Positions 10,694 to 14,546 of a stretch of DNA of 64,000 bases are shown here, piece by piece. The DNA comes from Rebecca billardiae RCC1528 (taxonomy: Eukaryota > Protista > Haptophyta). A program made the translations under genes and the position numbers. The notes below the pieces were generated by a model. That model was not told the origin of the DNA. It did no database searches and was given only the letters and a program-made list of their open reading frames with translations. The DNA lies in the NCBI GenBank assembly GCA_965240325.2, contig OZ251230.1:2294001-2358000 (forward strand). Reading direction: 5' to 3'. Each line of letters starts with the position of its first letter. The first letter of the stretch is position 1.

Positions 10694-11296
10694 ATGGTTA
10701 GCGCTGCATGCTTGCTGCCCGCGCTGGCCACCGCGCTGCCGGTGGCACGCTCCGTGCCGGAGCACGGAGATCTGCCGCTCGTCACATTCGACGGCACACC
10801 TGCGAGCACGCACGCGTTCGAGACGGTGAATGACCCCGTGATGGGTGGCGCGTCAACATCCGAGTTCTCGGTCGACACGGCGCAGCACACGGGCGTGTGG
10901 GACGGCGAGGTGCGCGTCGTCCCGTTCCTCGGCAAGCCCGGCTTCTGCGTGCTGAGGACGCGCGCCGAGCAGGAGTTCCCAGACGTGAGCGGCACCTCCG
11001 CCATCGAGGTGAAGCTCTCCGGCCCCGCGAGCGGGCTGCACAACTTTGAGGTGCAAGTCCACGTGCACGGCGTGACGACGAGGCAGACTGTCTACACCGC
11101 CGCCGCGCCGCTGCAGGCTGGGCAGACCGTGATGCGCGTCCCGTGGAGCGCATTCACGCTATCCTGGCGTGGCCAACCCGTGAAGGGGCCACCGCTCACC
11201 GACCACCTTGCACAGTTCAGCGGCGTCGGGCTGTCCACCTCGGGCAAAGCTGGCAAGTTTGTCGTGTCGCTCATGTCGCTCGCAGCGGTACGCTAG
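10694..11296 (+). CDS. CIA30/NDUFAF1-domain protein with a predicted signal peptide
   Basis: CIA30 signature VNDPVMGGAS, followed by GVWDGEV...GF and RVPWSAF...WRG; hydrophobic N-terminus MVSAACLLPALATA. Confidence 0.8.
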   Translation: MVSAACLLPALATALPVARSVPEHGDLPLVTFDGTPASTHAFETVNDPVMGGASTSEFSVDTAQHTGVWDGEVRVVPFLGKPGFCVLRTRAEQEFPDVSGTSAIEVKLSGPASGLHNFEVQVHVHGVTTRQTVYTAAAPLQAGQTVMRVPWSAFTLSWRGQPVKGPPLTDHLAQFSGVGLSTSGKAGKFVVSLMSLAAVR

Positions 11297-14200
11297 GGTC
11301 GTCGGGTTGCCATCGTTGATTGGAATGATGATGCTCGTCGTAGTATTTATCTGAACGCCAGAACGGCGGGCCATACTCAGTCAGCAGGCGGGTCGTCATA
11401 TCACAGACACCGTGTCCGATGAGACTGATCCGAGTGATCGGCGATGCCCGATGATCACCGTGACCGGTCTTCCCGGACCCGGTGACACTCCGACCGGCGG
11501 CCGGCGCGGCACCGGGGTGGCCGCCGTGCACCGCAGTCGCCTCACAGTCCACGGTCGTCGCGTCGTCGTCGCGGCGGGTCCATGCCTCGGGAAGGCTGGC
11601 CATCACGTTGATGTGCTGCGACGCCCGCCGCCTGCTGCCGCGCCTTGCTTGGTGGCGCGCGTTCTCGGCGCCCAGCGCAGAGAGCTCTCGTCCGTGCGTC
11701 ACCATGCCACCCATGCTGCCGCTCGACTCGACCCTGGGGACAGCGGCGTGCAGCCCGGCGGTGAAGCTGGCCAAGCTGGCCACGCCGGTCCTGCCCTCGG
11801 CAGCCGTGCGCGAGACGTTCGAGCTGGCGCTCGGCCGCGCGGCCCCGAGGCCCGCCTCGAGCCTCTCGCGCGCGATCTCCGCCTCCACGCGCGAGATATA
11901 ATCTCGGAAGAGCGGCTCGCGCGAGCCGTCGGCGCGCGTCATCGCCTTCGGGAAGAAGCGCTCCTTGTGCCGCTCGATGTGCTCGCGCATGTGCACGGCG
12001 TCGGGCTCGTCCGAGCGCAGGATGTGCCCGTACAGCCCGAGCACGGGCGAGACGAGCCGGAGCTTGTCAGCCTCGTCGAGAAAGCTGCCTTCGAAGACGT
12101 GCAGGGAGAGAGAGTCGAGCTCGTCGCGGGTGAAGGCGCACACCTCGAGCTGCTCGGAGGGCCGCTGCTCGGCGGGCTCGGCGACGCCCACCGCGCCGGG
12201 CACTACGGCGTCCACCACCGCGTCGTGCTTCGCATCGTCCTCCGCCGCCGCGCCGCCGCCCGCGGCCGTGTCCACCGGGTGGCGGGCAATGTACGTGCCG
12301 GCGAGGCCGGAGCCGCACACCTTGGCGAGGACCTCGAGCCGACACCAGCCGCGCGAGATGTAGGTGTAGATGCCGCAGCGCTCGCCCGTGTGCTCGTGCG
12401 TCGCGCGCGGCGCGAGGATGAGGAAGACGTCCGCGTTGCACGCGTACACGGGCAGCGACGCGATCGCCGTAAGCTGGAGCCCGCGGTGCGTCTGTGGGAC
12501 GCTCGACCAGTCCAGCCACACGTACCACGAGCCTCCCGCCGCGGCGACGGGCGCGCACGGCGCCGGCGTGACCGCGCCGCCCACGATGGCGCGCACGGCA
12601 CGCTGCAGCGCGCCGAATTGCACGCCGCTCGGGTCCGGGTGGACACGCGAGAGCCACCTGCGCAAGGCGCGACGGGGGTGCGCGGGGTAGCCGTGCGGGC
12701 GGCCGTGAGGAGTCGGCGAGCCGTGCGCGCGCGCGCGGAGAGAGAGAGGGCGCCGCAGCGGGACACCCCGGCGCGAGCCGGGCGGCCGCGCGCCCGAGCC
12801 GGCGCAGCCGGTGGCGCGACGCGCGCACTGGTGGCTGACAAAGATGATGCGGCTGTGCGCGCGGAACTCCTTGAGCTGCTCGATCGTGTCGAGGAACACG
12901 AGCTCGCCGCGCGCGCGCCACGCCTCGTGAGAGAGCAGCTCTGCGTGTGCCAGCAGCGCGTCGACGGGCACGAGCACCATCGGGAAGCGCAGGTCGGCGA
13001 CGCTCGCGAGCGCGTCCGCCACGAGCTCGTCCGCGGCGTCCTCCGCGAGGCGCGTGAGCTCGACCGCGCGCCGGCGCGACTTGTACAGCGCGTAGCCGAG
13101 CGCGATCACCGCGATCGCCACGCCGCTCGCGCCGGCGAGCGCGACAAAGGACGAGAGGACAGAGGCGCGTCGCACCGCGCGCAGAGCGTTCGCCGACGGG
13201 ATGCTCGTGATCACGCACCACGGCGCGTCGAGCGGCGGCATGCCGTAGTCGGCCGTGTCGAAGGGCTTCACGCTCACCAGCCGCTCGAGCGACTCGTCCG
13301 TCGCGTTCGCCAGCCAGCGCGCGTCGGGGCACGCGGCACCGTCGGAGCGCGCGCGCACGACACGCACAGCGTCTGCGAGCAGTGACGCGTTCGGCAGCGC
13401 GCGCAGCGAGCAGCCGAACGTCGGGTCGCAGTGCGCGTCGTCAAGCGCGTACGACGCGGCTGCGGGCACCTGCGCCGCCTCCGCCGCCGCCGACGCCGCC
13501 GCGCCCCTTGCCTCCGTGTTGCCGAGGATGCGCTCCCCGTTGCGCGTGAAGAGCAGAGCGAGCGCGCCGCGCGTGATCTCACCGCCCTCATCCAGCTGCC
13601 GCTGCAGCAGCGCCGTGAGCCCGCGCAGGCTGACCGCCATCGCGATGCGGCCGGCGGACTCGCCGCGCGCGTCGGCGAGCGGCAGGTTCGCCTCGAAGTG
13701 CTGCCCCCAGCCCACGCCCGGGTCGTACGGCCCGAACCAGGCAAAGTCGCCGAACGCGGGCCGGCGCTCCGCCATCCAGAGCGGCGCCATCGTCGTGGCG
13801 CAGTCGAGCGGCCGCAGGCACGCGGGCGGCTCGAGCGACGGGTCCGAGCTGCAGTCGGGCGCGACGACGGCGCCGAGGCTGTTGCTCGCCGCGTCGTAGA
13901 GCCGGAGCTGCCGCACCATCGCGCCGCCGCCCGCCGACGCGTTCGCGTCCCACAGCTGCACGTCTGATAAGTGGGCACCGCTGCCGTCCGGCGCGCGCAC
14001 GACCGTCGCAAACGAGGCGTTATTGCACTGGTCCATGCGCGCGTGCGGCAGGCCGGCGTACATGACGCCGCTCGCGATCACGTTGTGGTGCTCGCGCGCC
14101 GCGCCGTCCGCGTCCACGCTCGCCAGGTGCGCGTCCTCCATCACGCGCTCGAAGAAGCGCTCGAGCAGCGGCTCGAGCTGAGCGTGGTCGGAGAACGTGC

Positions 14201-14546
14201 CCGGCGTGACCACGTGCGACAGCATGGCGTGGCTGAGCGAGGTCGCGTGCGAGTACGTGAAGTAGAGGAGCACGCCCACCTCGCGCGCGATGGCCTCGAG
14301 GTGCCGCCCGCGCGCGTCGTCGCCCGTCTCGTCGAGCGCCTGGGCCATCGATGTGAATGCCAAATACCACAGCGTGATGACGATCGCGGCGGCCGTCCCG
14401 AACGCCAGCGCCGCCACCAGGACGGCGCGATGTGAGATCGCCGCCACATCCACCCGCTCAGTGGTGGATGCGCTGTCGACCGACGAGCCGCGCTCGCTCG
14501 GCGCCACCGCCGTGGCGCGGCGGCGACGGGGCGCGCGGATGCGCAT
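11271..14546 (-). CDS. Receptor-like protein: TM - dCache-like sensor - TM - TIR/HET-like domain
   Basis: Two TM helices flank a region with the dCache_1-like pattern (WFGPY...LPLADARGESAGRIAMAVSLRGLTALL...ALLFTRNGERIL...WCVITSIP). Removing the in-frame intron 12658-12828 (CA|GT...CAG|G) joins IFVSHQ-WLSRVHPDP, followed by YVWLDWSSVPQ, SLPVY and YISRGWCRLE. Confidence 0.75.
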   Translation of the reverse strand: MRIRAPRRRRATAVAPSERGSSVDSASTTERVDVAAISHRAVLVAALAFGTAAAIVITLWYLAFTSMAQALDETGDDARGRHLEAIAREVGVLLYFTYSHATSLSHAMLSHVVTPGTFSDHAQLEPLLERFFERVMEDAHLASVDADGAAREHHNVIASGVMYAGLPHARMDQCNNASFATVVRAPDGSGAHLSDVQLWDANASAGGGAMVRQLRLYDAASNSLGAVVAPDCSSDPSLEPPACLRPLDCATTMAPLWMAERRPAFGDFAWFGPYDPGVGWGQHFEANLPLADARGESAGRIAMAVSLRGLTALLQRQLDEGGEITRGALALLFTRNGERILGNTEARGAAASAAAEAAQVPAAASYALDDAHCDPTFGCSLRALPNASLLADAVRVVRARSDGAACPDARWLANATDESLERLVSVKPFDTADYGMPPLDAPWCVITSIPSANALRAVRRASVLSSFVALAGASGVAIAVIALGYALYKSRRRAVELTRLAEDAADELVADALASVADLRFPMVLVPVDALLAHAELLSHEAWRARGELVFLDTIEQLKEFRAHSRIIFVSHQCARRATGCAGSGARPPGSRRGVPLRRPLSLRARAHGSPTPHGRPHGYPAHPRRALRRWLSRVHPDPSGVQFGALQRAVRAIVGGAVTPAPCAPVAAAGGSWYVWLDWSSVPQTHRGLQLTAIASLPVYACNADVFLILAPRATHEHTGERCGIYTYISRGWCRLEVLAKVCGSGLAGTYIARHPVDTAAGGGAAAEDDAKHDAVVDAVVPGAVGVAEPAEQRPSEQLEVCAFTRDELDSLSLHVFEGSFLDEADKLRLVSPVLGLYGHILRSDEPDAVHMREHIERHKERFFPKAMTRADGSREPLFRDYISRVEAEIARERLEAGLGAARPSASSNVSRTAAEGRTGVASLASFTAGLHAAVPRVESSGSMGGMVTHGRELSALGAENARHQARRGSRRRASQHINVMASLPEAWTRRDDDATTVDCEATAVHGGHPGAAPAAGRSVTGSGKTGHGDHRASPITRISLIGHGVCDMTTRLLTEYGPPFWRSDKYYDEHHHSNQRWQPDDPSVPLRAT

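What the first reader, a model, noticed from the sequence alone, without database searches (positions are those of the whole stretch)
11271..14546. Cache-sensor-coupled TIR/HET-like receptor: a candidate Toll-analogous small-molecule receptor in an alga
Seen: TM, dCache_1-like extracytoplasmic domain, TM, short helical linker, then a domain with SHQW, PDP, WLDWSSVPQ, SLPVY and RGWCRLE, visible only after removing intron 12658-12828. Known: dCache domains normally feed histidine kinases, chemoreceptors or cyclases, and TIR/HET domains are NAD+-consuming immune or cell-death effectors. Inference: a ligand-gated NADase or second-messenger receptor. I know of no characterised protein with this architecture, but cannot search to confirm novelty.
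Basis: partly seen in the sequence, partly recalled or inferred. Interest (0 to 1): 0.75.

Follow-up and report, generated by a model that had tools for sequence, protein, structure and literature searches.

The report
Algal dCache receptor with HET/TIR-like output
This is a real two-exon gene of a very GC-rich haptophyte-type alga for a membrane receptor that joins a bacterial-style small-molecule sensor outside the cell to an inside domain distantly related to fungal HET cell-death and TIR immune domains; what it binds and what the inner domain does are untested.

Summary
ORF 11271-14546 (-) is a real gene, and the 171-nt GT..AG intron at 12658-12828 is supported by homologues, by variation between strains and by codon composition.

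- **Layout:** short cytosolic N-terminus, TM1, an extracytoplasmic domain of about 400 aa, TM2, a helix-prone linker of about 30 aa, then a cytosolic domain of about 320 aa.
- **Family context:** the same output domain follows flytrap, solute-binding, CHASE, MHYT and other sensors, so it is a general receptor output module.
- **Prior art:** HET homologues in haptophytes were reported in 2014, and receptor-like TIR proteins in Gephyrocapsa huxleyi in 2025. I found no description of the dCache fusion.
- **This scan:** it has noted sister fusions on other pieces of this same genome.

The parts
11271..14546 (-). Whole gene span as an uninterrupted ORF (1091 codons unspliced; 1034 aa after splicing)
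   Evidence: Coding-type GC3 above 0.9 runs from about 14546 to about 11520.
12829..14546 (-). Exon 1: N-terminus to ..IIFVSH + CA of the Gln573 codon
12658..12828 (-). Intron, 171 nt, GTGCGC...TTGCGCAG, in frame (which is why the ORF is uninterrupted)
   Evidence: Absent from all homologues. 5 of the 7 differences from P0003 lie here. GC periodicity is lost. pLDDT is below 50.
11271..12657 (-). Exon 2: G of Gln573, then WLSRVHPDP... to the first in-frame stop. The last ~80 codons have non-coding-like composition.
14355..14435 (-). TM1 (aa 38-64), preceded by an Arg-rich cytosolic N-terminus
   Evidence: Kyte-Doolittle hydropathy; translation
13167..14354 (-). Extracytoplasmic double-Cache (dCache_1-like) sensor, aa 65-460
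13080..13166 (-). TM2 (aa 461-489), followed by KSRRR (positive inside)
12984..13079 (-). Cytosolic linker aa 490-521 (SRRRAVELTRLAEDAADELVADALASVADLRF). Helix-prone by composition; not modelled here.
   Evidence: Sequence. Helical character is an inference.
11856..12983 (-). HET-like / TIR-superfamily-like cytosolic domain (spliced aa 522-840, interrupted by the intron). It has an N-terminal beta-alpha extension, a five-strand alpha/beta core and a C-terminal helical subdomain.
12831..12836 (-). Invariant Ser571-His572 at the end of strand A (FVSH), directly before the intron
12492..12518 (-). WLDWSSVPQ (W620-Q628): strand B and the following loop. D622 is invariant and Q628 nearly invariant.
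12333..12347 (-). WCRLE (W677-E681) in the helix after strand C. R675, W677 and E681 are invariant. E681 is the candidate catalytic Glu of a TIR-type WxxxE motif.
   Evidence: Motif definition from PMC10641520.
11271..11855 (-). Poorly conserved, low-complexity C-terminal tail. The end of the ORF overlaps the convergent CIA30 ORF by 26 nt.

Best explanation
The gene encodes a two-pass membrane receptor. Its extracytoplasmic double-Cache domain binds a small molecule. By analogy with bacterial dCache receptors, binding moves the C-terminal stalk helix and TM2. A linker of about 30 aa passes this change to a cytosolic HET-like domain of the TIR superfamily, and ligand binding changes how these domains are arranged or associate with each other.

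The output domain carries an invariant polar set (Ser-His on strand A, Asp of PDP, Asp of WLD, Arg-x-Trp-x-x-x-Glu in the C helix). It is therefore most likely an enzyme of the TIR / N-glycosidase kind acting on NAD+ or a related nucleotide. It would either make a second messenger or deplete its substrate.

Shown here: gene structure, topology, the dCache fold, the family and its fusions, and the conserved residues. Inferred: the ligand, the coupling mechanism, catalysis and the substrate.
For: - **Gene and intron:**
- **Topology:**
- **dCache fold:**
- **Conserved architecture:** the same full-length layout occurs in Diacronema lutheri (KAG8460130.1), Prymnesium parvum (KAL1521120.1 plus an MMETSP transcript), Chrysotila carterae and Noctiluca (MMETSP transcripts). 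Of 21 proteins with this sensor, 19 also carry at least the start of the output domain; the other two are short fragments.
- **Invariant residues:** E26, S56, H57, W116, D123, D164, F193, R217, W219 and E223 across 87 members.
- **TIR-type layout:** the model's secondary-structure order is beta-alpha x5, with W-x-x-x-E in the helix after the third strand. That is where TIR enzymes carry the catalytic Glu (PMC10641520).
- **HET link:** Pfam HET is the only recurrent family, hit by 27 of 87 members, best E 1.2e-4, in the same order starting at SHQW. A fungal HET cluster is among the Atlas shape neighbours. HET-TIR homology, including the conserved Glu, is published (PMC4986451, PMC9153377).
- **General output module:** the domain follows ANF_receptor, Peripla_BP_6, SBP_bac_1, MHYT, dCache_1, CHASE and other sensors and H-NOX.
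Against: - Our protein itself gives no Pfam HET or TIR hit even at E<=10.
- The PADLOC library gives no hit, and a profile search of PDB sequences finds no TIR.
- Foldseek against PDB finds nothing (best E 1.3).
- VIA Z to TIR domains is 4.2-5.6. That is below fucosyltransferase C-domains (6.2-6.8) and within the range the tool calls common.
- I could not superpose E681 on a known catalytic Glu.
- No enzymatic activity is known for any HET domain (PMC10890737, PMC10197012).
- No RNA run could be listed for this locus.
Confidence: 0.5

Rival explanations
1. Same receptor, but the HET/TIR-like domain is a non-catalytic assembly module. Ligand-driven clustering would recruit soluble proteins carrying the same domain (ankyrin-, MORN-fused or single-domain paralogues), as animal TLR TIR domains recruit MyD88/MAL.
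For: - The family includes many short or soluble members and ankyrin or MORN fusions that could act as adaptors.
- Dyrka et al. proposed an adaptor role for HET (PMC4986451).
Against: Ten invariant, mostly polar or charged residues across 87 divergent members, including the WxxxE Glu, are more typical of an active site than of an interaction surface. The two roles do not exclude each other.
Confidence: 0.25
2. The cytosolic domain is a different Rossmann-like enzyme that only resembles TIR/HET superficially, for example a nucleotide-sugar transferase or a nucleoside-transferase-like enzyme.
Against: - Sequence evidence points specifically to HET, the only recurrent Pfam family, matched in the same order.
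- No glycosyltransferase Pfam family is hit.
Confidence: 0.12
3. The architecture is an artefact: two genes, a pseudogene, or a spurious long ORF of a GC-rich genome.
For: GC-rich DNA gives long spurious ORFs here, such as 11412-13385 (+). No RNA run was listed. The 3' tail has non-coding-like composition.
Against: - Both domains give strong homologues with the same order, including transcriptome-derived complete ORFs.
- GC3 stays above 0.9 in this frame across both domains.
- Both models are confident.
- The gene is 99% conserved in a second assembly, with changes concentrated in the intron.
Confidence: 0.03

Closest known systems
Receptor-like TIR-domain proteins of Gephyrocapsa (Emiliania) huxleyi (New Phytol 2025, PMC12489294)
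   Same: - A haptophyte protein with an extracellular ligand-binding region, a membrane span and a cytosolic TIR-type domain with a conserved Glu.
- Proposed to act as a receptor that generates a signal.
- Members of our family with ANF_receptor/Peripla_BP_6 plus Ephrin_rec_like ectodomains fit that paper's description of 'leucine-binding and EGF-like' ectodomains.
   Different: - That paper describes flytrap/EGF-like ectodomains with one TM helix, not a dCache sensor between two TM helices.
- I could not obtain its sequences, so whether it is the same family is unverified.
- Its domains were called TIR by HHsuite. Ours is not detected by the Pfam TIR models with HMMER.
Fungal HET domain (Pfam PF06985) of heterokaryon-incompatibility and NLR proteins
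   Same: - Three co-linear conserved blocks (S-[HY]-x-W; W-x-D-x-x-[SC]-x-x-Q; R-G-W-x-x-x-E). The HET consensus is from my own knowledge.
- Sub-threshold Pfam HET hits in 27 of 87 relatives.
- A fungal HET cluster among the Atlas shape neighbours.
- Non-fungal HET homologues, including one from E. huxleyi, are published (PMC4986451).
   Different: - Below Pfam's gathering score; our protein gives no hit at all.
- It has its own N-terminal beta-alpha extension and a C-terminal helical subdomain of about 95 aa.
- It sits at the C-terminus of membrane receptors rather than at the N-terminus of NLRs or in soluble proteins.
- A cell-death role is untested.
Enzymatic TIR domains (SARM1, plant TNL TIR domains, bacterial AbTir/ThsB)
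   Same: - Alternating beta-alpha core.
- Strand-A motif F-[IV]-S-H and W-x-x-x-E in the C helix (PMC10641520).
   Different: No Pfam or PADLOC TIR hit. The fold match is not above noise. The domain is larger, with extra subdomains. Activity is unknown.
Bacterial dCache_1 chemoreceptors, histidine kinases and cyclases (PctD, TlpQ, PctA, TlpC and others)
   Same: The sensor fold and its position between two TM helices.
   Different: - The output is neither an MCP signalling domain nor a kinase, cyclase or GGDEF domain.
- The sensor is larger (about 400 aa against 240-320), with Cys-containing insertions.
- It is not detected by the Pfam dCache_1 model.
- It is eukaryotic.
Animal Toll-like receptors
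   Same: An extracellular sensor wired directly to a cytosolic TIR-superfamily domain.
   Different: No LRR ectodomain, two TM helices and a HET-like rather than canonical TIR domain. This is an analogy only.

Membership tests
Double-Cache (dCache_1-like) extracytoplasmic sensor, Cache superfamily | Lies between two transmembrane helices, facing outside | tested here: met
   Hydrophobic segments at aa 38-64 and 461-489, with an Arg-rich N-terminus and KSRRR after TM2.
Double-Cache (dCache_1-like) extracytoplasmic sensor, Cache superfamily | Long stalk helix, two PAS-like alpha/beta modules and a C-terminal helix; structural match to solved dCache domains | tested here: met
Double-Cache (dCache_1-like) extracytoplasmic sensor, Cache superfamily | Pfam dCache_1 (PF02743) or CHASE (PF03924) HMM above the gathering score | tested here: not met
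   No hit for our protein at E<=10. Among 20 relatives, one dCache_1 hit at E 0.15. UniRef nevertheless names two homologues 'CHASE domain-containing protein'.
Double-Cache (dCache_1-like) extracytoplasmic sensor, Cache superfamily | Small-molecule ligand bound in the membrane-distal module | not testable with these tools
   No residue-level superposition was available. The only lead is that the best neighbours bind choline or histamine.
HET domain (Pfam PF06985) | HMM score at or above the gathering threshold (22.5 bits) | tested here: not met
   No hit for our protein. 27 of 87 relatives hit below threshold, best E 1.2e-4; the individual hits I looked at scored 13-15 bits.
HET domain (Pfam PF06985) | Three conserved blocks in the same order | tested here: met
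   SHQW, WxDxxSxPQ and RGWCRxE are invariant or nearly invariant. The hmmscan matches keep the same order: SHQW at residue 55 aligns with HET position 5. The HET consensus itself is from my own knowledge.
HET domain (Pfam PF06985) | Induces cell death when expressed or activated | not testable with these tools
   An experiment is needed.
TIR domain (enzymatic TIR domains) | Flavodoxin-like fold of five parallel strands with helices A-E, matching solved TIR domains | tested here: inconclusive
TIR domain (enzymatic TIR domains) | Catalytic Glu in the C-helix WxxxE motif | tested here: inconclusive
   W677 and E681 are invariant and lie in the helix after the third strand. The motif is as defined in PMC10641520. 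Spatial equivalence to a known catalytic Glu was not checked.
TIR domain (enzymatic TIR domains) | Detected by TIR profile HMMs | tested here: not met
   No Pfam TIR family at E<=1 in any of 87 members. PADLOC gives no hit. The PDB profile search finds no TIR.
TIR domain (enzymatic TIR domains) | NAD+ or nucleotide cleavage | not testable with these tools
   A biochemical assay is needed.
Toll-like receptor | Leucine-rich-repeat ectodomain, single TM helix, canonical TIR domain | tested here: not met
   The ectodomain is dCache. There are two TM helices. There is no Pfam TIR hit.

The most novel reading that the evidence does not exclude
This is a ligand-gated HET/TIR-type enzyme. A defined extracellular small molecule would switch on a cytosolic HET-like N-glycosidase that makes an NAD+-derived messenger or triggers cell death. 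The ligand might be a quaternary amine or biogenic amine such as choline, betaine or DMSP-type infochemicals. The protein would be one member of a very large, unnamed 'sensor-HET' signalling system of marine protists. That system would take the place that two-component or receptor-kinase systems hold elsewhere, and it would offer the first tractable handle on what HET domains do biochemically.
Probability: 0.3. Interest if true: 0.85.

Novelty: new variant of a known kind. Interest (0 to 1): 0.66.

Why it matters
The biochemical action of HET domains is still unknown despite decades of fungal genetics, and TIR enzymes are central to immunity in bacteria, plants and animals. Here a HET-like domain with the TIR-type WxxxE signature is wired directly to a bacterial-type small-molecule sensor.

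The same output domain follows many other sensors in haptophytes, dinoflagellates and diatoms. If the domain is catalytic, this is a major, unnamed signalling system of ecologically dominant phytoplankton. It could bear on sensing of infochemicals, virus defence and bloom-ending cell death.

A dCache-gated version would also be a convenient experimental switch for studying HET/TIR activation. If the domain is only a scaffold, the finding still documents a new way of using Cache sensors in eukaryotes.

Tried and rejected
- Pfam on the whole ORF and on both exons at E<=10 gave nothing relevant; the TilS and LapA hits are noise.
- Profile searches of PDB sequences with both domain alignments gave no significant hit. 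The interferon-gamma matches lie on the helical subdomain and are chance.
- Foldseek against PDB with the output-domain model gave no match.
- PADLOC on 87 members gave no TIR or other defence model.
- The language-model atlas restricted to named clusters gave no usable hit for the output domain.
- The search for homologous proteins with the family profile gave only 9 hits because of its word filter, none annotated HET.
- No RNA run was listed.
- A six-frame scan of the window with both domain profiles found only this one copy. The neighbouring ORF is therefore not a detectable paralogue.
- I asked whether the intron position is shared with the D. lutheri paralogue. It is not: that gene has one 132-nt intron in the sensor region and reads through SHQW.
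- The tree of output domains shows that the dCache-linked ones cluster, but a single origin is neither shown nor excluded.
- I could not run a profile-profile comparison with HET or TIR alignments because no tool gave me such sequences.
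Full report
**1. Observation**

It is 171 nt long and in frame, so it does not break the ORF. Removing it joins ..RIIFVSHQ to WLSRVHPDPSG.

Four independent observations support splicing:
- Every homologue reads straight through this point. Examples are P0004 'IIFVSHQWLGATHPDP', P0005 'ICFMSHQWLSSTEPDP' and P0002 'VIFLSHQWLSWGTPDP'.
- A 99%-identical copy in another assembly (P0003, Logan ERR14847148) differs at 7 positions. Five of them, including the only indel, fall in the 57 intron-coded codons, and two fall in the other 1034.
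- In the ORF frame, GC at codon position 2 rises to 0.65-0.82 and GC3 falls to about 0.85 there. Elsewhere in the gene GC3 is 0.9-1.0 and position 2 is mostly 0.35-0.6.
- AlphaFold models this stretch at pLDDT below 50, inside an otherwise confident domain.

The Diacronema lutheri paralogue has no intron here. It has one 132-nt intron of similar type (GTGAGCGC..CGCCGCAG) elsewhere, so the position is not shared between paralogues.

No RNA run could be listed, so there is no direct transcript evidence for this locus. GC3 drops to 0.5-0.65 over the last ~80 codons (about 11516-11271). The ORF end also overlaps the convergent CIA30 ORF by 26 nt. The real 3' end is therefore uncertain. This does not touch the conserved domains.

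**2. Architecture**

| Segment | Residues (spliced numbering) | Basis |
|---|---|---|
| Arg-rich N-terminus | 1-37 | |
| TM1 | 38-64 | hydropathy, |
| Extracytoplasmic domain | 65-460 | |
| TM2, followed by KSRRR | 461-489 | |
| Ala/Glu/Leu-rich linker | 490-521 | sequence, |
| Conserved cytosolic domain | about 522-840 | |
| Low-complexity tail | 841-1034 | |

An exhaustive phmmer search found 1185 cluster representatives with E<=1e-3. Of the 150 listed, 148 carry the cytosolic domain and 21 carry the sensor. Of those 21, 19 also have at least the start of the cytosolic domain, and the other two are short fragments.

Full-length homologues of 785-968 aa with the same order come from several protists:
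- Diacronema lutheri (KAG8460130.1)
- Prymnesium parvum (KAL1521120.1 and an MMETSP transcript)
- Chrysotila carterae (an MMETSP ORF marked complete)
- Noctiluca scintillans (an MMETSP transcript)

The transcriptome-derived ORFs argue against the idea of two separate genes, at least for the homologues.

**3. The sensor is a double-Cache domain**

No Pfam model detects it, either in our protein or in 20 relatives. The single dCache_1 hit among the relatives has E 0.15. A profile search of PDB sequences is also blank.

The fold is nevertheless clear:
- With a 20-sequence alignment the model has pLDDT 85.8 and pTM 0.84.
- Foldseek's top 50 PDB hits are all dCache ligand-binding domains of chemoreceptors, histidine kinases and a GGDEF protein, with best E 5e-8.
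- The Atlas shape search gives TM 0.65-0.68 over 310-320 residues to bacterial dCache_1 sensors of cyclases, kinases, GGDEF and SpoIIE proteins.
- Language-model neighbours are all of the Cache clan.

The domain is larger than bacterial ones (about 400 aa against 240-320). It has Cys-containing insertions and a strongly conserved aromatic stretch, W-x-G-P-x-N-P-x-x-G-W-G-x-H-F-E. UniRef names two homologues 'CHASE domain-containing protein'. From my own knowledge, CHASE is a related double-PAS sensor, but the structural neighbours found here are dCache_1.

The best neighbours bind choline (PctD) and histamine (TlpQ). This is only a weak lead to the class of ligand.

**4. The cytosolic domain**

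An alignment of 87 members has ten invariant positions. In spliced numbering they are E541, S571, H572, W574, D581, D622, F651, R675, W677 and E681. Nearly invariant positions include R544, D553, Q573, Q628 and H660.

The model (pLDDT 80.9, pTM 0.80) is of low confidence only in the intron-coded stretch and in a low-complexity insert. It shows three parts:
- a small N-terminal beta-alpha extension;
- a core of alternating strands and helices;
- a C-terminal helical subdomain of about 95 aa.

FVSH ends the first core strand, WLD ends the second, and R-G-W-C-R-L-E opens the helix after the third. Enzymatic TIR domains carry the WxxxE motif with the catalytic Glu in that same helix (PMC10641520).

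Evidence for kinship with HET:
- Scanning all 87 members against Pfam at E<=1 gives HET (PF06985) for 27 members, best E 1.2e-4. No other family is hit by more than two.
- The matches keep the same order. In P0142 the match starts exactly at SHQW, which aligns with HET position 5.
- A fungal HET-annotated cluster is among the Atlas shape neighbours, at TM 0.42 by the query over 203 aligned residues. The query includes about 100 disordered residues, which lowers that TM.

Evidence that falls short for TIR:
- Our own protein hits nothing in Pfam.
- No TIR Pfam family and no PADLOC model is hit.
- Foldseek against PDB finds nothing.

**5. The domain is a general receptor output**

I scanned the regions N-terminal to this domain in 55 other members:

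| Pfam family | Members (of 55) |
|---|---|
| ANF_receptor | 10 |
| Ephrin_rec_like | 9 |
| Peripla_BP_6 | 8 |
| FG-GAP_3 | 3 |
| MHYT | 3 |
| SBP_bac_1 | 3 |
| NCD3G | 3 |
| dCache_1 | 2 |
| CHASE | 1 |
| HK_sensor_dom_bact | 1 |
| Phosphonate-bd | 1 |

- P0038 has ANF_receptor, then Ephrin_rec_like, then this domain. P0030 has SBP_bac_1 and then this domain.
- Atlas neighbours add H-NOX, ankyrin and MORN fusions, and a Symbiodinium ankyrin fusion was found.
- Taxa include haptophytes, dinoflagellates (Noctiluca, Prorocentrum/Polarella, Symbiodinium) and diatoms (Odontella, Stephanopyxis).
- In a tree of the 87 domains the dCache-linked ones cluster: 7 changes against a shuffled mean of 11.5, with 0 of 500 shuffles as low. 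The window's protein pairs with the D. lutheri paralogue. A single origin is neither shown nor excluded.

**6. Mechanism**

Shown: a sensor outside, two membrane spans, a short linker, and inside a conserved domain with an invariant polar set.

Inferred: ligand binding in the dCache domain displaces the stalk helix and TM2, as in bacterial dCache receptors. This re-arranges or clusters the cytosolic domains. Because TIR-type enzymes need self-association to form the active site, that change would switch on cleavage of NAD+ or a related nucleotide.

I give this about 0.5. The rivals are a non-catalytic assembly role (0.25), an unrelated Rossmann-like enzyme (0.12) and an artefact (0.03).

**7. 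Novelty**

I found no paper describing a Cache or CHASE sensor fused to a HET/TIR-like domain. Related prior work exists:
- Non-fungal HET homologues, including one from E. huxleyi (PMC4986451).
- Receptor-like TIR proteins of G. huxleyi with an extracellular ligand-binding region, a TM helix and a TIR domain with a conserved Glu, induced early in virus infection (PMC12489294). I could not verify that these belong to the same family.

This scan has also noted sister fusions on other pieces of this same genome: flytrap, PA-7TM, GPCR, lectin, H-NOX and a CHASE version. Those notes agree with my results, but they are not independent evidence.

I rate this a new variant of a known kind: a receptor with a TIR-superfamily output, using a sensor type not reported in that role.

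Noticed in passing
window 10661-11296 (+): A CIA30-family gene (complex I assembly factor-like; Pfam CIA30 E 2e-18) lies convergent to the receptor gene. The two ORFs overlap by 26 nt at their 3' ends, and the same arrangement is seen in the second assembly (L001).
   Followed up: partly
window 11271-11516 (-): The last ~80 codons of the receptor ORF have GC3 of 0.5-0.65 against above 0.9 upstream. The annotated C-terminus may be UTR-like read-through, or a 3' intron may have been missed.
   Followed up: partly
window 8224-10272 (-): - A neighbouring long ORF has a multi-helix hydrophobic N-terminal part.
- It is followed by 'GFVSHSDGDD..' and '..LLVLLGPSWAEQVHCVVELLVA', which recall TIR box 1 and C-helix motifs.
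- It also has a duplicated ~20-aa motif (ARGARDPRISNLDDMFAEASA).
- There is no Pfam or PDB sequence hit, and my profile of the HET-like family does not hit it either. The nature of this ORF is unresolved, and part of the longer ORF (to 11043) overlaps the CIA30 gene and is probably spurious.
   Followed up: partly
window 17161-23054 (-): Ty1/copia-type retroelement ORFs (RVT_2 E 2.7e-33; zf-CCHC). This is the element for which another first-stage note proposes a frameshift at 20433-20445.
   Followed up: no
L002 6351-6482 (Diacronema lutheri JAGTXO010000035.1): The 51%-identical D. lutheri paralogue (KAG8460130.1) has a single 132-nt intron in the sensor region (GTGAGCGC..CGCCGCAG) and none at the SHQ|W site. 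Intron positions therefore differ between paralogues.
   Followed up: yes
P0038, P0030, P0047 (relatives, not in the window): The same output domain follows a class-C-GPCR-type flytrap plus a Cys-rich module (P0038), a bacterial solute-binding domain (P0030) and a branched-chain amino-acid binding domain (P0047). This is a whole repertoire of single-protein sensor-HET receptors in marine protists.
   Followed up: partly
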